64,000 nt of DNA from Mytilus californianus. Its lineage: Eukaryota. The notes under the pieces were generated by a model. It saw only the letters and a list, made by a program, of their open reading frames with translations, did not search any database and had not been told where the DNA came from. The position numbers and the translations under genes are program-made. Where the stretch lies: contig NW_026262668.1 of the NCBI RefSeq assembly GCF_021869535.1, positions 118,544,001 through 118,608,000 of the forward strand, given 5' to 3'. The first letter of the stretch is position 1. The number at the start of each line of letters is the position of its first letter. Positions 3,336-57,949 of the stretch are shown in pieces.

Positions 3336-4890
3336 ATATCTATTCTATGTATTTTTTGGTAGGCTTGTTTGCCTGTTTGCCGTCTTTTGGTTTTGTTTTG
3401 CCATAGAGTTTGCAGTTTCTCTTTGCCATATGAGCTTTGAAAGTCATCTTGATATTTTCATTTATTTGTTTCAGCAAAAATGTTCTTTGTATTGTCTAAT
3501 CTGTTGTTACGTGTCATCAGCTATAAGTCGATCGACATTAAAGGGGGAAAATATTTGTTTTGCCTATTACGCCTCTCTTTGTGTCGCTGCATTCGTGCTC
3601 ATTAGCTTCTTCCTTTACTTCCTTGTTTATAATCACTGGTGGTTGCTTAGAATGTAATCTTTTGGAAAAGAAATTTAAAAATAACTTCTGTCGTGTCATT
3701 TACATTTCGCATGCAGTAAAATGTTGACACTAGTGTGTCATTATGGGATTTGATTTGTTTTATTAGGTAACACTACATAAACCGTATTGTACCTCCATAC
3801 AATGGTTTAACAAGGTTATCAATTTCCATTCATATAGTAGTATTTTGGTCTTATAATGTGTATATTACATTCCTTAAATGCTGTTATGTATTGGAAAATA
3901 TAAATTAATACAAACAAATTTTCATTCCAGGAAATTCTAGATTTGGATATAAGGAAACACTTGAAGCATATTTCATCACAAGAAAATGGACATATACGTG
4001 TCAAGAAATAAGTAAAACAATGATTGAAATATATGACAGCATTTGTTTTCAAGGAATTATTGATCTAGAACAAGCATATATATATATTTGTTATATCAGC
4101 ACTTTAATTCCATTATGGGTTGATTTCTCTAGATGCATACGATTAACACCAAATCGTAGTGACTTCTAACACAACTTAAAGTGATGATTTGCTTTATTTT
4201 TGACTTATGTGACTTGTCATTTTAAGAAATGTAAGAATAAATTGAGTTATTGTTCCTTCCTAGCAATCATATTCATACACAGATACTCTATATGCCGTAG
4301 ATACATATATTCTGGTGACCAAACACCGACTTATTTAGCTTTTAAACTAAGTGGTACATGTAGACCTCGGACATTTTCAAAGTTCTTTTCATTTCCTCAT
4401 AACGACATCATTTGTCTTACAATTTATTTATTATCTAATTCTAGCTCCTTGTCCAAAATCATAAACATGATTGCTATTTACCTTTCTTGTTGACTTGATT
4501 TGCCTTTCACACCGATTATTGAGATTTGAACATCGGTAAAATAATGTTGATTTATAACGATGGTACAAAAAAATTGCCTTTTCCCGAGAGAGGAACCATA
4601 TTTAAATAGGATTGTTTTTAATTTTCAGTACAATCTCCATTCTACGAAGACATGAATTTAAAATGCACCCGTCCATTCTGGTTATCGTGTTGTTTAAGAG
4701 AAATTAAAAACATTCAGACAAATTTACATATAAAAAATTACAAACATTCAGATAAAAAAAAGAATCTAGCCCTTATTATAATCTTTACAATGAATCCAGG
4801 GAGTAATCAGGTTTTTGTGTTACCTGGATTTGTCTCTTTGAAATCGAGTTACGAGATTTGACCATCAATAAAAATCAATCAATTTTGAAG

Positions 4891-5045
4891 ACAATAACAT
4901 TAACGGTACAAATTTTCTACACCAGATGCGCATTTCGACAATAAATGTCTCTTCAGTGATGCCTGACGCCAAAATATCTGAAAATCCAAAGCTTATTAAA
5001 AAGACGATGAGCTGAAAACAAAAAACGACAAAAAAGTATAGTCAG
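4891..5045 (-). mobile_element. Truncated retrozyme-like repeat carrying the 4919-4962 hammerhead
   Basis: Homologous to 55834-55985. Confidence 0.75.
4919..4962 (-). ncRNA. Minimal type I hammerhead ribozyme with intact core
   Basis: - strand: GCAUCA CUGAAGA GAC auuuauu GUC GAAA UGCGCA UC^UGGUGU. Confidence 0.86.
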
Positions 5046-36200: not shown

Positions 36201-39200
36201 TTATCAAGAATTTGCTATAAATATATTGTTCCTCATAAAGCTTTAGCTCGTTGTGCAATTTCTTACTTGGAAATTCCATTTCCGTTGACATGACAGCCTT
36301 GTCGCCACTCTTAGTCTTTCCGGATGAATGTAGGTACAGATATACAAAACCTTCTTTGGCCCTTCTAGGACCTGAATATACGTAAGGTGCTTTCTGAAAT
36401 ATATATTAATGATTTGATTCAATCCTTTAAAAGTTTGATGTTTGTACTTACATGAGCATCACGATGGATGCCACGTTTGGAGCAGGATCTGCTTACCCTT
36501 CCGGAGCACCTGATAACCCCTGTGATATTTGGTGAGATTCGTGTTGCTCAGTCTTTAGTTTTTCATGTTGTGTTCTGTATACTGTTATTTGTCTTTTTAT
36601 GTTTTTTTCTTTTCTTACTATGGCATATTGTTTGTTTTCGACTAATGAGTTTGATTATCCTTTTGGTATCTTCGTCTCTCTTTAGAAAAAATATGTTTTC
36701 AGCAGACCATTACTTTATTCTACAAACGGCTTAAATCATACAATTGTTGGACAATGAATTTTTCAAGGGGTTTTATATAGACATGCTTCTGTGACCATCT
36801 GCTTTTAAATATAGAATTTCGGTAAAACATTTGTCAGGATTCTAATAGCATTTAATCAGTTTTTCGAAAGTGTCAAATAGAACAAATTCAAATACAAATA
36901 TTTTGGATTACATTATTTTGTTTCCACAATAAAGGGCACAGGTAAATAAAAGAAAAAGTTGATAGTAATCGTGTTTTCATGATCATAGCAAAAAAAAAAT
37001 AATTTTAAGTATTGAATGCTTCTTTTAGTAATTTCATAGGGTTGTAAAAGCATTGACCGTGCGTACATTTTTAGAATGAAGCGCTTCCGCGCTTCATACA
37101 AAATGTACTTCGGTCAACGCTTTTACACCCCAATGAATTTACAAATAGAAGCATTCAATTCTTAATTGAAGGTAAAAGGTATAACATCTTCCTACTTTAA
37201 TTGAATTGATATAAAACGTAAATAAAAAGACATGTAATTGTTACTTCATTTATTAAATATTGAATTACGTTGAGTGACTATACATTTTAAGAATTAATGA
37301 TTACATTTTGATATTATCATTGTTTTATATATATGTTGATTTCCAATAGATAACAGTTTTTCCCTTAATTAAGTTAGACAATTTCAGTTTCAATCTATTT
37401 CAGTTATGGTTAGTATTTATAATTTTTCTATCATAGCCAAACTTTTTGATATTTTGATTCTCCATGCTCTTTAACTTTAAGTCTTATTCTTAAAGTGATG
37501 CTCGAGGTCAAAATATATAAAAGTACAAACGTCAGATAACGTCAGAGTGATTTTGTTACAAAGTATGACTTATCTCCTCAAGAAACAAGAACTTTGTATC
37601 TACGTTTGCTATTCGTTTTTACAAAACAAAGATGTTGGACTATTTCTTTCAATCTGTCTTTAACATTTAAATGGTATATACGAGTGTAAACGGTTTAGAA
37701 TTCAAATGCTTTTATACTTTTGCAAGAGAAAAGAGCTTAACATTAACAGATTTTTTTAAATTTTTTTAGGTTTTCACGTTTGATTTTACGCCACTTTATA
37801 TAGTAGGTAGTTTCAATGTAACTCTAAGTTCGGCTTTGATTGCCGAAAACAATATTAGCGGTACCAATAGTACTGCACCTGGTGCGCATTTCGATAGTTC
37901 ATGTTTTATCAATGATGCTCGAGGCCATAATATAGAAAATTCAAATTTCTAATGAAAACGTTGTAAAGCTAGAAACAAAATCCATAAAGAACCTAAAGTA
38001 TAATCAAATCCGGACAATGAATCGGAGTTCTGCATGAGGGAGATAGATACTTAATTTCAAATAATATCTAAAAATTTTAACAAAACAGGAACTTTCTATC
38101 ATACAATATTCGTATTTTCGTTCTAGTACCAAAATACAGGCTACTGGGCTGGTGATATTCTGTGCACTAACTGTCCACCAGCAGAGGTATCGACCCTGTG
38201 GTAGTAATAACATTAGTGGTACCAATTTTGCTGCACCAAATGCTCATTTCGGAAATCAATGTTTTCTTAGTTATGCTCGAGGCCTACATATTTGAAAATT
38301 CTGATAATATTTGTGTTGATAGTTTGACAAGAAGTGTCGTGGAGCACTTAGCAGACCCAGCAGTATAATTTTGATATCCATTATGGCGATAGAAGATCCA
38401 GCTCTTCATTTTTATTTAGGAACATAGAATATAACTATGATTTTTCAGGATTTCCTCTTTGTAAGTGTCGTTGATGTAAATGTTGAGTTTTAGAGTGATC
38501 TGCGCGGAGTTTAATAAGCAAAGACAACAACATATTTCTTATGGAGGTAGGTCTGGTGCCAAACAACATTTTGGCCTTTGAAGAAAGGTGTAGCATGAGG
38601 GTTCATATATTCATTCAGTTTGTTTTAAATCACTCAGTGTATCAACGACATCATAGCCTTAATCTATTCGGAAAGAGTATCAATGTCTTTTTTTCGCGTT
38701 CAGCACAGTATGAATTAGTATTTTACAGTTGTGTTTCCAGATCATTAATTTAGGCTTATGGTATTTCAGTTCTTTAGTTGAAACATTTTGTAGAAATGCG
38801 TTCTGGACTTTGTTTAGGTCACTAGGTATCATGAGGCCAGTCGGATTACATATGAATAGGAAACTAGCAATTAAGAGGTTTTGATTTGAAGTCATCAATA
38901 ATGAGATCTTGCGTCAAGTGTTTATAATGGAATATTTCGTCGTAATAAGTATGCTATATATATTAAATGATAGGAACAGACGGATCTTTAAAGTAAAGAT
39001 TCTATGTTTAAGGATATTGCATAAATTAGTGACATCAATGCCAACCGGTCTGAAAAGTCTGTGATAAGCAATACCAAAGGTGATAGCTGTATGTTTGTAT
39101 TTGTTTGAATTGGGATTTTCTTGGAATTGGTTACCAAGCATCAGTTGTACAGATAGTAAAGTTTCAAAGGAGTGAGGAGTACGTGATGTCTACTGCGCTG

Positions 39201-51200: not shown

Positions 51201-54200
51201 AAACTTACGATTTCTTATATGAAACAAAAATAAAACAAAGAAGCTTTACTGTTTTGCTAAGTACTTAAATATTTACAATCAGGTCGGTACATAAAATCGG
51301 AACCACGTCAGAATATTCAATAGATAGAACATCGAATTTCTGGACTATAAATTGAAATATTTCGCAGTTTATCCGAGAAAAAAAATGAAATACTAGTCTT
51401 ATTGTAAAAATAACGAAACAATTGTAGGGAAAGATTTAAGCTAAAAGGTTAAAGAACATATTCCCTTCTGGGATGTCTTCTGAGCTTACACGAGCTACAA
51501 GTAAATCTAAAGAGAAAGATTGAGTAATTATAACCCCAAACGATAAATACTAATACATATACATTTCACGTTCTCAGGAACATGAACATTTGTACAATTT
51601 TACTTAAGAAATTTTCAATTTGATAACAAAATTACCATTGCATAACAAACTCATATTTTAAATTGGCCTTGTGTCGCCATTAATATCATCTGATATATAT
51701 ATATACTTTGCATTTGTATTTTTATACAATATACAATAAAACTAAAACTAAAACTTTTTCAATTTTATCATAATGTGTCTGTTTTAACATACAAAGTTGC
51801 GTTCTGCTATCGTGAGTCAGAACATAACAGAGCGCTGGCGTATGATCTTTTTAAAAATAGTATTCCTCTGAAAAATAAGTTTTAATATGTTGGTCTTTAA
51901 GTACTATATTGAGATTTTTCTAAAATGAGCTTAATCATAAACATATCACAGATAATCTTATATGAGAACTATATTACATCGCATTTGGAAGTAAAAAAGA
52001 ATCAACAAGCAAAGATAAACTTTTAACGGAAACTGGTCAAACAGAAACAAGAGTGCAGAAGCACAATCTCAAAATTCAAATTACATTCATAGTTTGAAAC
52101 GTTGGTGAAGTAATTAAAACCCCCATAATAAAGCGTACAAACATACTAAGTACGCTCATTTGTTAACATTAACTTTAAGTTTCTCAGTTTTTTAGTTTAA
52201 TTTCGTGTGGTAGCTGCCAAACTTGCACATTCATTACCACATTCATTTATAAATGTACGCCTCCGTTTTTGACACCTTTGGTTTTATATAAAAAAAATTG
52301 CTTATATTTTCACTATTCAATAAAAACCATTTTAATCGTTAACATCAGAAATGTCTAATTTATTACATTAAAATGGTAATTTTGTTATGATATAAGCCTA
52401 TTTTTAGATATTATCCTTGCTTTTTAAGTATAGTTCGGTTATTTAGCTTGTGCTATTTCATGTATTGTTCAAGTGCACTTCATTAATTGTTCTGTTGTAT
52501 TTCAGGTATTAACAATAAATTGGTACACGACGGGTACCAGAAAATAGCTACCGAACAGAGTTTGAAACAGACGGGTAACAACAATAGCTACCGAACAGAG
52601 TTTGAAACAGACGGGTAACAACAATAGCTACAAAACAGAGTTTAAAACAGACGGGTACAAACAATAGCTACCGAACAGATTTTGAAACAGACGGGTAACA
52701 ACAATATATACCGAACAGAGTTTGAAACAGACGGGTAACAACAATAGCTACCGAATAGAGTTTGAAACAGACGGGTAACAACAATAGCTACCGAACAGAG
52801 TTTGAAACAGACGGGTAACAACAATAGCTACCGAACAGAGTTTGAAACAGACGGGAAATAACAATAGCTACCGAACAGAGTTTGAAACAGACGGGTAACA
52901 ACAAAAGCTACCGAACAGAGTTTGAAACAGACGGGTAACAACAATAGCTACCGAATAGAGTTTGAAACAGACGGGTAACAACAATAGCTACCCAATAGAG
53001 TTTGAAACAGACGGTAACAACAATAGCTACCAAACAGAGTTTGAAACAGACGGGTAACAACAATGGCTACCGAACAGAGTTTGAACAAGATTTTAATTGA
53101 CTAAAGGAGAAAAAACTGCTTTTCATTGAATATGTCTACAGAATTACTTATTATGACGTGTTTATGTATTATTCGGTCTTTTGATCAGTTCATATCAAAA
53201 TGGTTGTTTCAGTTTAAAATCATTTAAAAAAGTACACATTTGTTTGCGTCATATTTGTTTATTTGTTTGTATTCAACATTCCGTAAAAGAGGGGAGAAAG
53301 AACCAAGGGTAAATATCTAGTTTCAAATAGAGAAAATTAGCACATGACATCCTTCAAAGTCCCCTTAATTCCGGAACACCAATATTAAAATCATTCAGAT
53401 TGAAAAGATGTTTGTAACATAGAACTGATCATTGTATATAAATGTTTAAAAACTCAAACTGGATATTTCAAAGACATGGATCCAATCGTCAAATGCTTAA
53501 GGATTAACAAAAGAATTACAAATCTAAAAAAATCATCAAAATCAACAATGAGCTTATTATCATTGTATAAATTATGATTAAGATCCAAACAAGCGTATAA
53601 CATCGTGTAAACTTTCTTGGATTAAAACATTCTGGCTGCATATCCCTTCATTCTAAATAATGACGACATGGAACAGGGAGAGAAATCTTAAGGATGTTCG
53701 CTCCTCTTATTTTTTGAATTTTTGTTAGATATCTCCTCTGGTTTTATCCATGTAGTGCCATTCAAATTTTTGCCGTTAACCCCTTTCTTTTTTTTCATAA
53801 TTTTATTAAATATAGTTTAAAAAAGCCATATTTGAAAATCTTATAAGATCCTTGTAATTTATTCATTGTTTTTGAAATAACAAATTGCCAATGTTAAATG
53901 TAAGAAAATTCTAGAGAGAAATCATTTCCCGCCAATTTTTAATGGCTTATTTTCTCGTAATGAACATCAACACAGAGAGACTGCCTGTCATATTTGTAGA
54001 AGGGAAACAACTGGATACAATAGACACTTTTAATAACTCAGGAAGTTGTATAACAACAGAAGGTGGTGCTGAAAGAGATATAAAGGTCAGAACAGGAAAG
54101 CTAGATCCGCATTTATTAGATTAGGCAACATCTGGAAAACAACAGCTTTTTCAAAGAAGACCAAGCTTAGACTTTATAACGGTTGTGTTCTATCTGTGCG

Positions 54201-57200
54201 GCTCAGAGTGCTGGAGAAAACTTGTCTAGCTTGCCTTATGTGCCAACAGGCATAGCAAGGACCTAGTTAGTAAGTAAGTATGTCTCGTAAAGCAAGGACA
54301 CGGACCCTTCATTTTCTTTTTCTGCTTTTTTCAGTTCCATTATTGATGTACATGTACTATCAATTTATAACAGTCTTTTAAAAAGATTGTTATTTTGAAA
54401 CAATGTAGCGAACATCCTTAAATCGCTTCTATTATGTTTAGGGCGTGGTCTCCAAAATAACCAAAGATCACAAGGTAATCGTACATGTATCAATTAAAAC
54501 AAACGAAGGCATCATTTGTTACAAGTCTAGAAGGATAATTTAACTGTCTTGAAGCGGGTAGGATTGGGAACTCAAAAATAGTATTTCTCAATCATATGTT
54601 TATTTGCCTTATCCGAGCCAGGAACTTCGTCCGTCAGGTTTTAGCTTCATGTTATTAATTTATTCACAGAATATTTTGTTTCGGGCAGATATTTAATAAA
54701 ATTTGTTCAATGCATGCACGACTTTTCTGGACTCTGGATTGGGTGGGGGTAGTGCTTGAAATATGAAGTCTTTCATTGGAGGCTGCATGTTAGAAAAATC
54801 AATACAAAAGTTTTTATTTGAATTGTAACATCATTGAACGCAAGAAGACATATAATCATCTATTTGAAATAGTGTCTATTATCAAAACTGTACCTTTATC
54901 TTAGAAGTTAGTACACATATATCGTATTTGCTGTAAAACCCATTTACTCAGATTTAGCTAGCTATAAAACCAGGTTTAATCCACCATTTTCTACATATGG
55001 AAATACTTATACCAAATCAGGAATATGACAGTTGTTTTCCATTCGTTTGATGTGTTTCAGCTTTTGATTTTGCCATTTGATAAGGAACTTTCCGTTTTGA
55101 ATTTTCCTTTAAGTGCGGTATTTTTTTTATTTTATTTTTTACAACATTTAAAATAGACATTTTTCTAAATAACGGAGACCAGCTAGATAACAGTAAAAAA
55201 AATAACATCAGTACTGACATTTTGACTGTTCCATAAATTCTTATTTTTCAATTACTCACGTTCCGTCGACAAAAGAAACATAGTTTTCATGTCCAAGATT
55301 CATGGCCTTAGTATCTTCAAATGGAATCCATTGTATACATGTCAAGGAACGAAATTCTTCAATAGCTTGAAGGATTTTGCCTGTATGAGTTGCATCTAAA
55401 AATAATATTTTTAAAAACATAAGTCTTGACCTTCAAAATTGTAGATTTATAAAATGCTTTTATTAGTTGTAGCCAGTTATATTTTTCATCTGTTTTTCAA
55501 TAAGTTGGTTCAGATTAATTATACGGAATGGGTTTTGCTCATTGTTGATGGTCGTACATTGCCCCTATAGTTGTTTCCATACACGTTCTGTGGTATCAGT
55601 TGGACAGTTATTTCATTGGCAATCACCTTATTTCTGCATACCGGATTTGTTCTTTTGCAGGAAAAACAACTTAAAATACCAAGTAAAAAAAACCCAATTA
55701 ACTGGAAAGTTAAATGTCCGTTTTTATAACTCGGCATGCAAAACACAAACTGTCACTGTCTGATAGAAGACCATAGAAATAGTGCAAATGAATTTATTTG
55801 TTAAAGGTGATCAATCCATATTAATGTTTGTTAATAATAACATAAACGGTACCAATTTTTCTGCACCAGATGCGCATTTCGACAATCAATGTCTCTTCAG
55901 TGATGCTCGAGGTCAAAATATTTGAAAATCGAAAGCTTATTAAAAAGATGAAGAGCTATAAACCAAAAAGGACTAAAATGTAAAGCCAAAGCAGGGCAAG
56001 GACTCAGAGCTTTGCATGAGGGAGATAGATATACCTTCGGGGACTATCAGTCCACCAGCAGAGGCATCGACCCAGTTTGTAATAACATAAACGGTACCAA
56101 TTTCTCTGCACCAGATGCGCATTTCGACAATTAATGTTAAATGAGACAGTATAGAAAACATGTTCAACTGCAAAATAATGTGAAGGGATATCTAAATGAC
56201 GTATCTGACCACAAGAACACTGAAAAATAAACAATGAAAATTGGGATATGGGATAAGAAGTCTTTCTTGTGTCGTGAAAATGGTCTTGTTTGCACAGTAA
56301 AATTTGCATTGTCTCTAGAACATATGTTATACATGGGTAAAGAACGGAATTAGAATGGATGAACATGAGACACAAAGTCTTGTCAAATACTTAAAACATG
56401 CGAGGTGGAGAAGTCTTATGCATGTGAAGGGTCGAGCTCTTCGCACCAATTGTTCATCAATAAACACATTGTTTACCAATATACAAGGTGAAATTTAAAA
56501 TAACGTTTACCATCTCTGAAACAAACAAATGGAAACAATTCTTGATATTCGATGAATATACTTTCCGACTTAAATATAGACTTTTAAAATGGAGACATTT
56601 AATTTCCTGGAGATGCACTATCAACGCCAATGAACAGAAAGCGACGAAGGTATTCCCTTGAAATAACCTTTTTAGACAGGCATTGTTTCGAAAATAAGCA
56701 CCATGTTGGCTTAACTAATGAGTACAAAGATAAGTCAACTGAAATAGAAAAGTTTTTTTTTTGTAATTTTTTCCACAGGAGGAAGTTGAGGATATATGGA
56801 TTATAAAATGCAGACGAAAGATGCAACAAAATTGCCGACTACTTTGTTTAAATTCCGTCACCAAATGAATTCGCAAAACGTATCAACGATGGACACGTCT
56901 TTTAACAGAAATTACAACAAACAATTTTATTCAACTCATCCTCCAATGATAGCAATACCCAGTTCTTATGAAACTATGGGGTTCAAATAACAGGCACGGA
57001 CTGACTTATAGATTGTTTCTGTCGACCATTTCCCTTGAATTGTTTCAAATTTTGTGATGACAGGGCCTTTTATAGCTGACTATACGATATGTGTTTTGCT
57101 CATTGTTGAAGGCTATACAGTAAGTAAACTATAGTTGCTGAAATCCACGTCATATGGACCATCAAAGATTTGCAACTAACACTAAATTTCCAAGAGGACA

Positions 57201-57949
57201 CGAATATTTCCATGTGTTCTCAGACTTGATCATTTAAATACACTATTCCAATTGAAACAGTTAATATTTACTATCCCTTCATCCTTAATTTCATCAAGGC
57301 TGCTAAGATCCAAAATTTAAATATCGTACAACTGCTCGCATCTAATACGTTTATACACAATATCGTTATTACATTTTATAAACTTACATATGTGTAATAA
57401 TATATATTAAAAAAGACTAAGTGATGTTTGTGCATAAACGAACATATAAAAATATTTCTGATTTTCACCCATCTGTCGCTTAATATATCTTCAAGTTCAT
57501 TTCAAATAACAAAACGTTCGAAAGGTTTCCCGGTATTTCATAGGCGGCAAAATTTAGAAAAAAATGGGGAAACCTTTCGAACCATATAACTTTTGATAAA
57601 GGACTTTCCGTTTTGAATTTTCCTTGGAGTTCGGTATTTTTGTTATTCTACTTTTTTTTAAAGTCTTTGCACGGGGAGTCGAACTTTACTTCTTCCAGGT
57701 ACTTCTTTCGTCAGAAATGAACTTGAAGAAAATTAAAACAATTGGGGAGTGAAATCTGAATTTTCTGAAATTGTTCACCAAAAAGCTTTAATTTTCAATT
57801 GTCTATTTAAATTTTTTTGATTTTTACTCAGAAATGCAGCATACAAATGTTATATTATACTTACTAAATACTGAATCGATAACATACGGAACTATACCAT
57901 TTGGCCACAGTAAATTAGTCTTCGTGTAAAAGTTTCTCTTTCTGGAGTC
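15296..57949 (-). CDS. Spliced astacin-family (M12A) zinc metalloprotease, astacin-EGF-CUB-EGF-MAM-Thr-rich-MAM-MAM; 24 coding exons listed below; N-terminal signal/pro exons unresolved
   Basis: Manual exon chain with GT-AG at every intron and consistent phases. Lengths 85,136,79,192,127,114,110,119,146,114,101,127,185,79,720,92,130,176,82,95,127,179,97,29 sum to 3441 nt, open to TAG at 15298-15296. Motifs: RKR-NF activation site, [27 protein letters not shown], two 6-Cys EGF, CUB CGG..SPNYP, three MAM CxF..DW..GP..YxY..CLxFxYHM..GDIAxDD. Confidence 0.93.
15906..16002 (-). CDS. Exon: MAM3 part 4 IEIEANKGGQTKKKNKGDIALDDIQLSTGACT
   Basis: tattcag|ATT...ACAT|gtaagc; 97 nt, phase 0-1; GDIALDDI. 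Confidence 0.93.
16664..16842 (-). CDS. Exon: MAM3 part 3 (A)SEYCLQFHYHMYGAHIGNLVVYI...GDQGNRWNHACLNLSYPNDIT
   Basis: atttcag|CC...ACG|gtacat; 179 nt, phase 1-0. Confidence 0.94.
17337..17463 (-). CDS. Exon: MAM3 part 2 QTPTPKTGPSSAYSGNQYAYIEVNGKKTGEAAILSTDGTVLA
   Basis: atattag|CAA...GCAG|gtattt; 127 nt, phase 0-1. Confidence 0.93.
17593..17800. repeat. Minisatellite, 43-bp unit, about 5 copies
   Basis: ttgtgtgtatcttaatgtatttgtggtttttgctaatgtttat. Confidence 0.95.
17815..18513 (+). mobile_element. Penelope-like element 3' fragment (RT thumb plus terminal repeat region)
   Basis: SASYLDLHLEID, DKRDDFSF..VNFPFLCSNIP..YGVYISQLIRY, followed by ccttccggagcacctg..ggggttcgt terminal motif. Confidence 0.8.
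18860..19475 (+). mobile_element. CR1/L2-clade LINE 3' fragment
   Basis: RLRMNSSSLNSYLF..DSPNCRCG..HFLLSCP..R; KYIIKTKRF end; 3' UTR ending aataaaatattgtttaaact. Confidence 0.75.
19522..19616 (-). CDS. Exon: MAM3 part 1 (C)DRFVCGFESSDETCIFRNKGNDDFDWKLGQS
   Basis: ttgacag|GT...TCG|gttagt; 95 nt, phase 1-0. Confidence 0.93.
20400..20900 (-). pseudogene. Possible decayed LINE APE endonuclease fragment
   Basis: Only a GEFNSR motif and an LINLNG segment were recognisable. Confidence 0.3.
20988..21069 (-). CDS. Exon: MAM2 part 4 IEIEADKKGNKGDIAIDAILLSTGACT
   Basis: catatag|ATT...ACTT|gtaagt; 82 nt, phase 0-1; GDIAID. Confidence 0.92.
22330..22465 (+). pseudogene. LINE C-terminal zinc-knuckle fragment
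   Basis: SRSNRVCSLCKYDIDDEIHFILKC. Confidence 0.55.
22546..22721 (-). CDS. Exon: MAM2 part 3 (A)SKYCLQFHYHMRGAGSGSLKVWV...GNQGDRWLYASINIPYHNDLV
   Basis: ttttcag|CT...GTT|gtatgt; 176 nt, phase 1-0. Confidence 0.94.
23138..23658 (-). mobile_element. Non-autonomous Helentron/HINE-like element with both ends
   Basis: - strand starts ttttagctcacccggcc..ggccaagtgagct (5' stem-loop) and ends aggtgagcgacacaggctct-tt-agagcctctagt. Confidence 0.78.
23849..23978 (-). CDS. Exon: MAM2 part 2 GGTPTSGTGPANAYSGDQYAYIEVTKKKKNKIAILSTFNTVLE
   Basis: cacacag|GGA...GAAG|gtattt; 130 nt, phase 0-1; TPxxxTGP, YxYIE. Confidence 0.93.
24571..25171. repeat. Near-perfect 300-bp tandem duplication
   Basis: 24571-24870 vs 24871-25171; one substitution and one 1-bp indel seen. 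Confidence 0.95.
25480..26250 (-). pseudogene. Penelope-like element RT fragment
   Basis: LLDNIYVRFANKVYQQVVGIHMGTNSAPLIADLFLYCY, YLDD, IYDKRDDFSF..FPFLDGDVP, LLSQGFRYHTL. Confidence 0.85.
26985..27319. repeat. Minisatellite, 49-bp unit, about 7 copies
   Basis: aggtaaacatacggccatcaaccacaggcatatgtttatacacacctat. Confidence 0.95.
30262..30353 (-). CDS. Exon: MAM2 part 1 (V)SYSCGFESSDGKCIFENSIIDDFDWTLGHS
   Basis: tttattag|TT...TCG|gtaagt; 92 nt, phase 1-0; CGFE..C..DDFDW. Confidence 0.94.
31343..32062 (-). CDS. Exon: Thr-rich mucin-like linker with about 20 copies of a 10-aa unit (SVATTQKTTP-like)
   Basis: ttgacag|GA...TCAG|gtaaac; 720 nt, phase 1-1; 30-nt coding tandem repeat. Confidence 0.88.
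32150..32725 (+). mobile_element. Penelope-like RT fragment followed by a terminal-repeat-like segment
   Basis: SLNFTF..DDVLSLNN..YP..LEIKDT..YDK pattern across frames; its 3' end is the reverse complement of the start of the 8513-8710 insert. Confidence 0.65.
33163..33316. mobile_element. Short MITE with ca..cccgtagccagggggg/ttcg-type terminal inverted repeats
   Basis: cacacccgtagccagggg..ttcga and tcgaacccc..ccttgcaacgggcctg; gtagt duplicated at 33158-33162 and 33317-33321. Confidence 0.65.
33339..33417 (-). CDS. Exon: MAM1 part 4 VSFVGIRNGWMSYMAVDDIWLIPGTC
   Basis: ctacatag|GTG...TGCG|gtttgt; 79 nt, phase 0-1; AVDDI..C MAM end. Confidence 0.9.
35491..35675 (-). CDS. Exon: MAM1 part 3 (K)VERCLSFWYHMYSYTPSSMGSLNVFV...NQGKTWLYEEIDIPAVENLK
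   Basis: cactag|AG...AAG|gtttgt; 185 nt, phase 1-0; CLSFWYHM, GSLNV, NQGxxW. Confidence 0.93.
36267..36393 (-). CDS. Exon: MAM1 part 2 KAPYVYSGPRRAKEGFVYLYLHSSGKTKSGDKAVMSTEMEFP
   Basis: atttcag|AAA...CCAA|gtaaga; 127 nt, phase 0-1; GP..A..G..YxY pattern. Confidence 0.85.
37005..37165. mobile_element. Fold-back MITE with TTAA ends
   Basis: The whole 161 bp is an imperfect palindrome centred on atgaagcgc-ttcc-gcgcttcat, with ttaa at both ends. Confidence 0.8.
37850..38310 (-). mobile_element. Decayed retrozyme-like repeat; 358-nt monomer bounded by two mutated hammerheads (37875-37918, 38233-38276)
   Basis: Same 44-nt frame as the intact copies, but the cores read UUGAUAA and CUAAGAA; body homologous to 55834-56137. 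Confidence 0.78.
39449..39496 (+). ncRNA. Degenerate type I hammerhead of a second family
   Basis: CUGAUGA GUC uaauuuc GAC AAAA CGUGCG UC UGGCGU; the conserved GAAA reads AAAA and stem I is weak. Confidence 0.6.
39869..39969 (-). CDS. Exon: MAM1 part 1 (V)YAPIGCTAEVGEYCIFKQEPEPTTDQMNWDTGS
   Basis: atttcag|TA...TCG|gtaggt; 101 nt, phase 1-0. Confidence 0.85.
40395..40750 (+). repeat. ~350-bp interspersed repeat; other copies at 59975-60350 (-) and 62330-62642 (+, decayed)
   Basis: Three alignable copies sharing gggagggttgagatctc..ccccgcc..ggggccagctgaag..ttgacacattccccatttccattctc. Confidence 0.85.
40883..40996 (-). CDS. Exon: EGF-like domain 2 (G)CLGNPCKFGSCDSPINTESYVCTCDRGFTGKNCSELS
   Basis: ctctacag|GA...TCAG|gtaaca; 114 nt, phase 1-1; canonical 6-Cys EGF. 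Confidence 0.93.
42398..42472. repeat. 25-bp unit, 3 copies
   Basis: cagatagtcNacgactgtaactgaa. Confidence 0.9.
42559..42704 (-). CDS. Exon: CUB part 3 RCGSTKHEVWDSTVDEEMNTMIIILNSYVGSDKPAGNGFKMNFVSIGK
   Basis: ttgacag|A...AAGG|gtgaga; 146 nt, phase 2-1; RxCG and GFxxxF CUB motifs. Confidence 0.9.
43050..43212. repeat. 44-bp unit, about 3.7 copies
   Basis: aacattcctaaacatattttatcaaagacgagttacaatctat(a/t). Confidence 0.95.
43472..43590 (-). CDS. Exon: CUB part 2 GVENNILRGTVVDMDISNNDYACYHWMEIRYNLMGQKGP(E)
   Basis: caactag|GGG...CCAGA|gtatgt; 119 nt, phase 0-2; CYHWxEIRY segment. Confidence 0.88.
43703..44915 (-). mobile_element. Longer, more decayed copy of the same HINE-like family
   Basis: Termini gctcacct / aggtgagct and several internal gatct..tgct degenerate repeats shared with the other two copies. 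Confidence 0.7.
45004..45082. repeat. 28-bp inverted repeat (1 mismatch) around a 23-nt spacer
   Basis: aataattcatgcaagccatagatttgtt / aacaaatctttggcttgcatgaattatt. Confidence 0.85.
45531..45640 (-). CDS. Exon: CUB part 1 (D)TCGGTINVEMGTEVTLTSPNYPSPYSTGLICTWIIK
   Basis: tatacag|AT...AAG|gtaata; 110 nt, phase 1-0; CGG, SPNYP, CxWxI. Confidence 0.94.
46741..46854 (-). CDS. Exon: EGF-like domain 1 (A)NCPSLACKNGGFTIMNCTCYCPDVLTGDLCEQPISNT
   Basis: ttttctag|CT...ACTG|gtatgc; 114 nt, phase 1-1; six Cys with CxNGG and CxC. Confidence 0.9.
47455..47581 (-). CDS. Exon: end of astacin domain SFSRNGMETILVKDW...DVVEVTSTYECS
   Basis: gttttag|AGT...TCAG|gtgagc; 127 nt, phase 0-1; FSxNGxxTI and terminal YxC motifs. 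Confidence 0.92.
47838..48075 (-). repeat. ~230-bp interspersed repeat; other copies at about 8714-8946, 14770-15020, 33663-33785 (+) and 28046-28212, 54957-55140, 57597-57660 (-)
   Basis: Shared aaaaataccgaactc..ggaaaattcaaaacggaaagtcc..caactgtcatattcctgacttggtacag. Confidence 0.85.
48722..49550. repeat. Compound satellite: ~105-bp A block and ~57-bp B unit arranged A-B5-A-B1-A-B3
   Basis: A starts at 48722, 49114 and 49269; B = tcatagtcgatagcttaactgcgtaatcttagctcaaagcgtaagaagtaaattatt. Confidence 0.9.
49627..49818 (-). CDS. Exon: zinc-binding site [27 protein letters not shown]...YPYDMSSVLQYGTR
   Basis: ttttag|CAT...AGA|gtaagt; 192 nt, phase 0-0; HExxHxxGxxHExxRxDR signature. Confidence 0.96.
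50878..50956 (-). CDS. Exon: astacin domain GCTSYIGRVGRFPQTISLSIQQNCVT
   Basis: gaatag|AGGATGC...ACT|gtgagt; 79 nt, phase 2-0; GCxSxIG motif. Confidence 0.92.
52543..53087. repeat. Minisatellite, 40-bp unit, about 13.5 copies
   Basis: aatagctaccgaacagagtttgaaacagacgggtaacaac. Confidence 0.96.
53960..54280 (+). mobile_element. RTE-clade LINE 3' fragment with terminal hairpin and (TAAG)n tail
   Basis: GSCITTEGGAERDIKVR, ARSAFIRLGNIWK, KTKLRLYN; hairpin cttgccttatgtgcc-aaca-ggcatagcaag at 54230-54259; tail tagttagtaagtaagta. Confidence 0.78.
55260..55395 (-). CDS. Exon: astacin domain (N)ATHTGKILQAIEEFRSLTCIQWIPFEDTKAMNLGHENYVSFVDG(T)
   Basis: tttttag|AT...GGAAC|gtgagt; 136 nt, phase 1-2; matches the astacin TCI-F/W segment. 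Not in the ORF track. Confidence 0.9.
55834..56137 (-). mobile_element. Retrozyme-like repeat, about 1.2 units (245-nt internally deleted monomer), with one full and one 3'-half hammerhead (56108-56137)
   Basis: taataacataaacggtaccaatt..gcaccagatgcgcatttcgacaa repeats at a 245-nt period. Confidence 0.8.
55863..55906 (-). ncRNA. Minimal type I hammerhead ribozyme with intact core, intronic and sense to the protease pre-mRNA
   Basis: - strand: GCAUCA CUGAAGA GAC auugauu GUC GAAA UGCGCA UC^UGGUGC; 6-bp stem I, 3-bp stem II, palindromic stem III AUGCGCAU. Confidence 0.88.
57865..57949 (-). CDS. Exon: propeptide end and start of catalytic domain [28 protein letters not shown]
   Basis: ctgcag|GAC...TTTA|gtaagt; 85 nt, phase 0-1; astacin WPxGxVPY motif. 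Confidence 0.92.

What the first reader, a model, noticed from the sequence alone, without database searches (positions are those of the whole stretch)
55834..56137. Intact self-cleaving hammerhead plus a matching substrate half in an intron, sense to the protease pre-mRNA
Seen: on the - strand (the transcribed strand of the gene), 55906-55863 is a perfect minimal type I hammerhead (CUGAAGA, GAC/GUC stem II, GAAA, AUC^ site, GCAUCA/UGGUGC stem I). 245 nt upstream in the same RNA, 56137-56108 holds only the 3' half (GUC GAAA UGCGCA UC UGGUGC). Established: hammerheads with a palindromic stem III and a 2-nt loop (here AUGCGCAU), as in Penelope-like elements and metazoan retrozymes, fold poorly as monomers and cleave as dimers. 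Inference: the complete copy could use the half copy as partner, forming an 8-bp stem III and cutting the intron between the first two catalytic-domain exons, about 0.5-0.7 kb upstream of the 55395 acceptor. A retroelement relic could thus throttle expression or affect splicing, or release a ~245-nt RNA.
Basis: partly seen in the sequence, partly recalled or inferred. Interest (0 to 1): 0.75.

Follow-up and report, generated by a model that had tools for sequence, protein, structure and literature searches.

The report
Mussel hammerhead retrozyme copy in intron
The hammerhead self-cutting RNA motif is real, but it is one worn, shortened copy of a small mussel jumping element present in over a thousand copies that landed in a protease gene's intron, and nothing found here shows that it affects that gene.

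Summary
On the - strand, 55906-55863 is a complete type I hammerhead. Rfam RF00163 gives 31.2 bits (curated cut-off 34, E 6e-6, full model). 56137-56108 repeats only its 3' part.

Both pieces belong to one insertion, 56137-55836. It is 1.16 head-to-tail units of a 350-nt repeat family and carries a private ~103-nt deletion. The family's ribozyme core occurs 1,451 times in this 1.65-Gb Mytilus-type genome, often in 350-bp tandem arrays. Insertions share a fixed 3' end and start anywhere, so the "half copy" is just the 5'-truncated end.

The family is a sister of the published mussel retrozyme Mg353, which cleaves in vitro and forms RNA circles. Its hammerhead differs from Mg353's by one compensatory pair change in each of the three stems.

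The host is an astacin/CUB protease gene on the same strand. Folding favours the proposed 8-bp pairing between the two copies. That fold completes only one catalytic site, which would cut at the half copy.

The one raw RNA run showed no host-gene transcription and no read ends at the predicted sites, so an effect on the host remains speculative.

This is a new family of a known kind and an ordinary insertion. The scan has already reported retrozymes elsewhere in this genome.

The parts
55863..55906 (-). Complete type I hammerhead. Stem I 5' strand 55906-55901, core CUGAAGA 55900-55894, stem II GAC 55893-55891 / loop 55890-55884 / GUC 55883-55881, GAA 55880-55878, palindromic stem III AUGCGCAU 55877-55870, C17 55869, stem I 3' strand 55868-55863. 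Predicted cut at 55869|55868.
   Evidence: (RF00163, 31.2 bits, E 6e-6, model 1-45)
56108..56137 (-). 5'-truncated hammerhead (the 'half copy'). Loop II remnant 56137-56129, GUC 56128-56126, GAA 56125-56123, AUGCGCAU 56122-56115, C17 56114, UGGUGC 56113-56108. It has no core and no stem I 5' strand. This is the substrate strand of the predicted split hammerhead, with the cut at 56114|56113.
55836..56137 (-). The whole retrozyme insertion: unit positions 327-350, then one unit, then positions 1-33 of the 350-nt family unit, 94% identical to an array unit. The 57-nt overlap between its two ends is 55/57 identical.
56031..56037 (-). Junction of a private ~103-nt internal deletion (unit positions ~86-183 are missing). 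This makes the spacing 245 nt instead of 350. The junction sequence is unique in the genome.
56040..56077 (-). Remaining part of the block shared with the published Mg353 retrozyme family (unit positions 37-99, 86% identical between families). It is the least variable part of the unit. Family insertions end just before it.
55396..57864 (-). Host intron (GTAAGT ... AG) between two astacin-domain exons. It holds the insertion plus other high-copy repeats.
57865..57949 (-). Putative upstream exon (..LWPNGIVPYVIDSVF). It joins in frame to the exon at 55395. The joined protein was not searched.
   Evidence: inference from the astacin N-terminal motif
55260..55395 (-). Downstream exon (..ILQAIEEFRSLTCIQWIPF..). 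Weak Pfam Astacin match to profile positions 17-48.

Best explanation
This is an old, slightly decayed insertion of a non-autonomous, hammerhead-carrying retroelement: a metazoan non-LTR 'retrozyme' of the kind thought to be copied by Penelope-like elements. It lies in an intron of an astacin/CUB protease gene of a Mytilus-type mussel.

The family unit is 350 nt and non-coding, and each unit carries one type I hammerhead. By the published model for its sister family, multimeric transcripts cut themselves at each hammerhead. The 350-nt monomers are then closed into circles by a tRNA ligase, and a reverse transcriptase copies circles or multimers back into DNA. Copying starts at a fixed point 33 nt past the cleavage site and stops anywhere. 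This gives tandem arrays and '1.x-unit' insertions whose upstream end is a truncated repeat.

If the intron is transcribed, the two copies are predicted to pair through their 8-nt palindromes into a split hammerhead that could cut once, at 56114|56113. The expected effect on the host mRNA is small. The downstream exon is transcribed within seconds of the ribozyme being completed, whereas the sister ribozyme's half-life is about 7 min.

Shown here: the motif, the family, the insertion anatomy, homology to Mg353, the compensatory changes and the host gene. Inferred: circle formation for this family, the copying enzyme, and cleavage at this locus.
For: Motif.

Family size and arrays: there were 2,592 first-look candidates, with arrays of ~350-bp period. 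The family's 32-nt ribozyme core occurs 1,451 times at up to 1 mismatch, with 0 in the reversed-pattern control. Hammerheads are spaced 347-355 nt apart in the loci.

Insertion anatomy: 27 of the 32 elements listed end at unit position 29-34 (21 of them at 32-34), while their starts are scattered over the unit and their lengths run from 0.5 to more than 6 units.

The window copy is 94% identical to an array unit and has a deletion junction found nowhere else in the genome.

Kinship with the biochemically validated element: the Mg353 construct is printed in the supplement of PMC7229834. Its ribozyme core occurs 5,550 times in this genome. The two families share an 86%-identical block and a ~79%-identical ribozyme region.

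Covariation between the two families: stem I G-C to A-U, stem II U-A to A-U, stem III C-G to U-A. The catalytic core is kept.

Literature: mussel retrozymes of 350-390 bp cleave at about 0.1 per min and accumulate as circles in gonad and mantle. Penelope-like element insertions show 5' truncation, partial tandems and a 30-40-bp tail. About 43% of Xenopus retrozyme copies lie in introns.

Composition: unit GC is 0.39, and the longest stop-free stretch in a trimer of the unit is 77 codons.
Against: The Rfam score is just under the curated cut-off (31.2 against 34).

No target-site duplication could be shown. The longest flank match averaged 5.33 nt against 5.27 nt in mismatched controls.

The one raw RNA run gave only low, two-directional coverage of the element, no enrichment of read ends at the cleavage sites, and no circle-specific joint. 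The 'goes back 242' joint is also present in DNA contigs. So self-cleavage and circle formation are not shown for this family.

The sample of loci is biased towards the best matches to the query.
Confidence: 0.88

Rival explanations
1. Co-opted regulator. The intronic full-plus-half pair works as a split, cis-acting hammerhead that cuts the nascent astacin pre-mRNA before the intron is spliced. This would lower mRNA output or change splicing, as the CPEB3 intronic ribozyme does in mammals.
For: The element is sense to the gene and lies 0.47-0.72 kb upstream of the acceptor. The 8-bp inter-copy helix is in the predicted ground state, and the full split-hammerhead fold is only 3.4 kcal/mol above it. 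The ribozyme is undamaged although the copy as a whole is ~6% diverged. There is a precedent for an intronic ribozyme tuning its host gene (PMC10919898).
Against: The insertion is one of more than a thousand copies with the same anatomy, so the arrangement is a by-product of copying. Zero changes in 44 nt at 6% divergence is expected by chance in about 7% of cases, and this is my estimate. The sister ribozyme is slow, about 0.1 per min, compared with the seconds polymerase needs to reach the next exon. From my own knowledge, experiments with hammerheads placed in introns (Dye et al. 2006; Fong et al. 2009) found splicing little affected unless cleavage was fast. There was no host transcription and no read ends at the sites in the RNA run. 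Deep conservation of the insertion was not shown.
Confidence: 0.05
2. Source locus for a small RNA. Host-gene transcription of the intron lets the element cut at both sites and release a 245-nt RNA that is circularised. This would be a deleted retrozyme circle riding on the protease gene's promoter.
For: Both cleavage sites are intact and 245 nt apart. Single-copy cleavage is documented for the sister ribozyme.
Against: The second cut needs the monomer fold, predicted about 10 kcal/mol above the ground state in this context. The copy has lost ~103 nt of the unit. The only 'goes back 242' joint was seen in 2 RNA reads and also in DNA contigs, so it reflects tandem DNA copies elsewhere. The deletion junction is unique to this locus and no RNA reads covered the unique flanks.
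Confidence: 0.05
3. Dead relic. The motif looks intact but neither site is cut at this locus in vivo, because of misfolding in the intron context, slow chemistry or fast splicing.
For: The monomer hammerhead fold of the isolated 44-mer is -1.6 kcal/mol against an MFE of -7.8. In the split fold, stem I has a pair probability of only ~0.001. No read ends were seen at the sites.
Against: Energy models ignore the tertiary contacts and co-transcriptional folding that drive hammerheads. The RNA run did not sample this gene at all, so it cannot show inactivity.
Confidence: 0.35

Closest known systems
Mytilus galloprovincialis non-LTR retrozyme Mg353 (Cervera & de la Pena 2020, PMC7229834)
   Same: Unit size is the same (350 against 353-390 nt). 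Both are low in GC and non-coding, form tandem arrays plus dispersed copies, and have one type I hammerhead per unit with a 2-bp stem III capped by GCGC, which gives an 8-nt palindrome. They share an 86%-identical block right after the insertion 3' end and a ~79%-identical ribozyme region. Both occur in thousands of copies in the same genome.
   Different: The rest of the unit is not alignable by BLAST. The core is CUGAAGA rather than CUGAUGA, and one base pair is swapped in each of stems I, II and III. The paper describes its two ribozyme variants as differing only in loops 1 and 2 and the upper part of helix I, so this third variant was not found described. Cleavage and circles are shown for Mg353 and not for this family.
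Penelope-like element pseudo-LTRs with minimal hammerheads (PMC8557442)
   Same: [quoted passage not shown] The hammerhead sits in the repeated part, and there is a short extension beyond the unit end (here 33 nt past the cleavage site; PLE tails are 30-40 bp).
   Different: There is no reverse transcriptase or endonuclease ORF. The element is 350 nt against 3-4 kb. The link to a particular autonomous partner was not tested here.
Double hammerheads of newt satellite 2, axolotl retrozymes and ASBVd (dimer-dependent cleavage)
   Same: A weak stem III that becomes a long helix when two copies pair. The predicted minimum-energy dimer of two copies is a double hammerhead.
   Different: Here only one of the two copies is complete, so only one of the two active sites can form. 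Single copies of mussel ribozymes of this type do cleave.
Discontinuous hammerhead in mammalian CLEC2 3' UTRs (Martick et al. 2008, cited; details from my own knowledge)
   Same: The substrate strand and the enzyme strand lie in the same RNA, separated by a few hundred nucleotides that form the 'loop' of stem I.
   Different: The CLEC2 ribozyme is a conserved, single-copy feature of a mature mRNA. This one is an accidental product of a truncated repeat in an intron.
Intronic self-cleaving ribozymes: CPEB3 HDV-like ribozyme (PMC10919898) and amniote HH9/HH10 hammerheads
   Same: A self-cleaving motif in an intron, sense to the pre-mRNA, which in principle competes with splicing.
   Different: Those are single-copy, conserved across species and, for CPEB3, shown to act on expression. 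This copy belongs to a high-copy mobile family and has no evidence of conservation or effect.

Membership tests
Hammerhead ribozyme, type I (Rfam RF00163) | Catalytic core CUGANGA ... GAAA ... and a cleavable UH site (here AUC) | tested here: met
   Direct reading, parsed. The pattern is expected 0.00 times by chance.
Hammerhead ribozyme, type I (Rfam RF00163) | Three helices around the core, with helix I open | tested here: met
   Stem I 6 bp (one G-U), stem II 3 bp, stem III 2 bp plus tetraloop, or 8 bp as a dimer.
Hammerhead ribozyme, type I (Rfam RF00163) | Score at or above Rfam's gathering cut-off (34 bits) | tested here: not met
   31.2 bits, E 6e-6, full-length model match. No hit at gathering level in the whole window. 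Mg353-type copies in the same genome score 34-45 bits.
Hammerhead ribozyme, type I (Rfam RF00163) | Helices supported by compensatory changes | tested here: met
   Against the Mg353-type ribozymes of this genome there is one double change in each of stems I, II and III. These are only two lineages, so the number of events is small.
Hammerhead ribozyme, type I (Rfam RF00163) | Mg-dependent self-cleavage | not testable with these tools
   Needs in vitro transcription. No read-end signal.
Metazoan non-LTR retrozyme | Short (about 170-400 bp) low-GC non-coding unit in head-to-tail arrays, with one type I hammerhead per unit | tested here: met
   350-nt period. GC is 0.39 and the longest stop-free stretch is 77 codons.
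Metazoan non-LTR retrozyme | Sequence kinship with an experimentally characterised retrozyme | tested here: met
   Two shared blocks with Mg353-type units of this genome. Mg353 sequence from the supplement of PMC7229834.
Metazoan non-LTR retrozyme | Expressed as linear and circular monomer RNAs | tested here: inconclusive
   The RNA run shows low coverage in both directions, no ends at the sites and no RNA-only back-joint. The run is ordinary paired RNA-seq cDNA and only ~6% of it was read.
Penelope-like-element-mobilised insertion | Variable 5' truncation with a fixed 3' end, and partial tandems | tested here: met
   Compared with the description in PMC8557442.
Penelope-like-element-mobilised insertion | Target-site duplication, or an identified autonomous partner sharing the 3' end | tested here: inconclusive
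   No flank-repeat signal above control. The partner element was not searched for.
Regulatory intronic ribozyme (CPEB3-type, HH9/HH10-type) | Single-copy, conserved at the orthologous position, with an effect on host mRNA | tested here: not met
   The family has at least 1,451 copies. The insert was seen only in closely related DNA runs. No expression data are available for the host gene.

The most novel reading that the evidence does not exclude
A truncated retrozyme insertion has by accident built a split hammerhead, with the substrate strand 245 nt upstream of the enzyme strand and an 8-bp stem III. This split ribozyme cuts the astacin pre-mRNA inside its intron and measurably lowers or re-routes expression of the gene. 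If so, the hundreds of similar '1.x-unit' sense-strand intronic insertions in mussel genomes would form a pool of ribozyme-based expression variants.
Probability: 0.05. Interest if true: 0.6.

Novelty: new member of a known kind. Interest (0 to 1): 0.25.

Why it matters
For this locus it matters little: this is an ordinary mobile-element insertion. Two family-level points are useful.

First, the CUGAAGA-core 350-nt family is a sister of the only biochemically studied mussel retrozyme. It differs from it by one compensatory swap in each helix. That is natural covariation evidence for the hammerhead fold in these elements, and it offers a ready-made set of natural stem variants for cleavage kinetics.

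Second, the insertion anatomy has three features that recur in both families: a fixed 3' end 33 nt past the cleavage site, directly before the only block conserved between the families, and free 5' ends. This marks where reverse transcription probably starts on the circular or multimeric RNA, so the block is a candidate recognition element for the copying enzyme.

Truncated copies such as this one also show that split hammerheads arise routinely as by-products. This is a caution against reading function into each one.

Tried and rejected
1. The Rfam scan of 4 kb around the site and the gathering-threshold scan of the whole window gave no hammerhead. Only the 421-nt scan with lax filters found it. 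A blank at large scale is therefore a filter and threshold effect and does not show that the motif is absent.

2. I looked for the published mussel ribozyme as exact strings in the paper's supplement and found none for our core. Reading the supplement showed that the published element is a sister family and is different from this one.

3. Target-site duplications: the longest common substring between 30-nt flanks of 24 insertions was no better than in mismatched pairs. The AACATTA match near the window copy's ends is therefore treated as chance.

4. tRNA-likeness of the conserved block (a box A / box B resemblance recalled from memory): ARAGORN found nothing in an array locus, so I dropped the idea.

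5. RNA evidence. No indexed RNA run holds the stretch. The one raw RNA run gave zero depth on the unique intron and exon sequence, reads only on repeats, and no start or end pile-ups. The run therefore gave no information on this locus, and family-level circles are not shown.

6. Selection on the ribozyme within the family: the mismatch rate is 3.8% in the hammerhead against 5.4% elsewhere. That difference is too small, and the sample too biased, to claim purifying selection.

7. The subfamily idea for the 245-nt spacing was rejected, because the deletion junction occurs once in the genome.

8. The joined two-exon protein was not searched. Exons were scanned one by one.
Full report
WHAT IS THERE

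Read on the - strand, 55906-55863 spells GCAUCA / CUGAAGA / GAC-(7 nt)-GUC / GAA / AUGCGCAU / C / UGGUGC. This is a complete type I hammerhead with the cut predicted between 55869 and 55868. Rfam's Hammerhead_1 model aligns end to end (model 1-45) at 31.2 bits, E 6e-6, when only 421 nt are scanned. That is 3 bits under the curated cut-off, and the hit is lost by the filters in larger scans.

The 21-mer from stem II's 3' strand to the end of stem I recurs exactly at 56128-56108. It lies within a 63-nt direct repeat of 94% identity with 245-nt spacing. Nothing resembling the core or the stem I 5' strand precedes this second copy. A pattern for this hammerhead is expected 0.00 times in shuffled windows and is found twice. 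The other copy is at 4925-4956.

WHAT IT BELONGS TO

Searching the window's own genome (1.65 Gb, 175 contigs) with the 315-nt stretch gave 2,592 first-look candidates. Of the scored matches, many stand head to tail with a ~350-bp period. Hammerheads in the fetched loci are 347-355 nt apart. One array (L017) gave a clean 350-nt unit. The 32-nt core of this ribozyme occurs 1,451 times at up to 1 mismatch, against 0 for the reversed pattern.

The window element, 56137-55836, is 94% identical to that unit. It covers unit positions 327-350, then a whole unit, then positions 1-33. About 103 nt (positions ~86-183) are missing, and the deletion junction occurs nowhere else in the genome. So the 245-nt spacing is a private accident of this copy and does not mark a subfamily.

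WHY THERE IS A 'HALF COPY'

Of the 32 elements found in 30 fetched loci, 27 end at unit position 29-34, and 21 of those end at 32-34 (...GGTACCGTTTATGTTATT). That is 33 nt past the cleavage site. Their starts fall anywhere in the unit, and their lengths run from 0.5 to more than 6 units.

This is the anatomy described for Penelope-like elements: strong 5' truncation, partial tandems in which a full copy is preceded by a truncated one, and a 30-40-bp tail (PMC8557442). It is what copying of a circular or multimeric RNA from a fixed start would give. The 'matching substrate half' is simply where copying stopped. Other insertions stop within the same ribozyme region, for example L004, L014, L025 and L029. 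I could not show target-site duplications.

KINSHIP WITH A STUDIED ELEMENT

Cervera and de la Pena (PMC7229834) described about 5,000 type I hammerheads in Mytilus galloprovincialis inside 350-390-bp repeats. A cloned repeat (Mg353) cleaved at about 0.1 per min, and abundant circular RNAs were found in gonad and mantle. The Mg353 construct is printed in their supplement.

Its ribozyme core occurs 5,550 times in this genome, so the genome is a Mytilus-type mussel. Earlier notes of this scan said the same.

Units of that type share two stretches with our family: unit positions 37-99 at 86% identity and the ribozyme region at ~79%. The rest does not align.

The two ribozymes differ by one double, pair-preserving change in each helix. 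In stem I, G-C becomes A-U. In stem II, U-A becomes A-U. In stem III, C-G becomes U-A. Position N7 of the core also differs (A instead of U). The paper says its two ribozyme variants differ only in loops 1 and 2 and in upper helix I. I found no description of this third variant, including in a search for retrozyme plus Mytilus. I therefore rate it a new family of a known kind.

Within the family, the shared block at positions 51-75 is the least variable part (1.3% mismatches). The ribozyme is only slightly better kept than the rest, 3.8% against 5.4%, in a biased sample.

HOST GENE

Pieces on the - strand match Pfam Astacin (49797-49546, E 7.4e-14, profile positions 86-146) and CUB (45722-45513, E 8.5e-5). 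The exon at 55395-55260 matches Astacin profile positions 17-48 weakly. An exon ending at 57865 carries the LWPNG..PY motif. GTAAGT at 57864 and AG at 55396 bound a 2,469-nt intron, and the two exons join in frame.

HOW IT COULD ACT HERE

I folded the 361-nt - strand RNA around the element. The 8-bp helix between the two AUGCGCAU palindromes is in the minimum-energy structure (-74.2 kcal/mol), with pair probabilities of 0.73-0.999. Three structures can be compared:

| Structure | Best energy (kcal/mol) |
|---|---|
| Minimum-energy structure | -74.2 |
| Best structure holding the split hammerhead (inter-copy stem III, stem I between the full copy's 5' strand and the half copy's 3' strand, stem II) | -70.8 |
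| Best structure holding the monomer hammerhead of the full copy | -64.2 |

Two isolated copies give a textbook double hammerhead as their best dimer, at -27.3 kcal/mol against 2 x -7.8 for two monomers.

Topology matters, however. In a double hammerhead each active site takes its enzyme strand from one copy and its substrate strand from the other. With one copy truncated, only one site is complete, and it cuts at the half copy (56114|56113). The architecture is then a discontinuous hammerhead with a 233-nt 'loop' in stem I.

Releasing a 245-nt RNA would need a second cut by the disfavoured monomer fold. Single-copy cleavage is documented for Mg353, so this is possible but slow.

On timing, which is my own inference: the acceptor is about 475 nt past the ribozyme's end, a few seconds of transcription away, whereas the half-life implied by 0.1 per min is about 7 min. 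Only a minority of transcripts would be cut before the downstream exon exists. From my own knowledge, hammerheads placed in introns disturb splicing little unless they are fast. The CPEB3 ribozyme shows that tuning of this kind can occur when the rates match (PMC10919898).

RNA AND DNA READS

No indexed RNA run holds the stretch. In the one raw RNA run (about 6% of it read), depth is zero on all unique intron and exon sequence. So the gene is not sampled in that run, and the locus-level question stays open.

Reads lie only on repeats: this element and three others in the intron. They run in both directions. There is no pile-up of starts or ends anywhere. The only back-joint (56076 to 55835) is also present in DNA contigs, so it reflects tandem DNA copies.

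DNA contigs of the probable source organism bridge both ends of the insert. A second organism label has the 5' junction, but with only 29 nt inside the element.

VERDICT

The functional reading has no support, and this arrangement is the routine by-product of how the family inserts.

Intronic retrozyme copies are common. In Xenopus about 43% of copies are intronic, although that is a modest depletion (bioRxiv 10.64898/2026.07.22.740005). The scan has already reported other retrozyme families elsewhere in this genome. Interest is low to moderate.

Noticed in passing
window 4880-5045 (- strand): A second copy of the same 350-nt family with an intact hammerhead (core at 4925-4956; the stem I 3' strand reads UGGUGU, giving a G-U closing pair). 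It ends at the same family 3' end and looks 5'-truncated to under one unit.
   Followed up: partly
window 37840-38200 (- strand): A third, degenerate copy of the family. Its catalytic core is mutated (CATTGATAA in place of CTGAAGAGA), and its stems III and I are changed. It keeps the ~103-nt segment that the intronic copy has lost.
   Followed up: no
unit positions 37-99 of the family (window about 56077-56031; loci L017, L032): This is the only block outside the ribozyme shared with the published Mg353 family (86%), and it is the least variable part of the unit. Insertions of both families end just upstream of it, so it may be what the copying enzyme recognises. A perfect 8-bp hairpin with a UUCG loop (GCCAGUAC UUCG GUACUGGC) lies just after it in the canonical unit and is deleted in the window copy.
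   Followed up: partly
window 55491-55587, 57043-57139, 57528-57721: Three other very high-copy repeats lie in the same intron. Their DNA word depth is 10^5-10^6, and they draw RNA reads in both directions at a depth similar to or higher than the retrozyme's. They were not identified.
   Followed up: no
window 52500-53090: A tandem array with a ~40-bp period, seen as a ladder of near-identical 38-aa ORFs on the - strand. It lies in another intron of the same protease gene.
   Followed up: no
G000 genome-wide: The loose first look for Rfam Hammerhead_1 reported about 217,000 candidate places (a rough count). The Mg353-type core alone has 5,550 near-exact copies. So hammerheads are a major repeat component of this genome.
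   Followed up: partly
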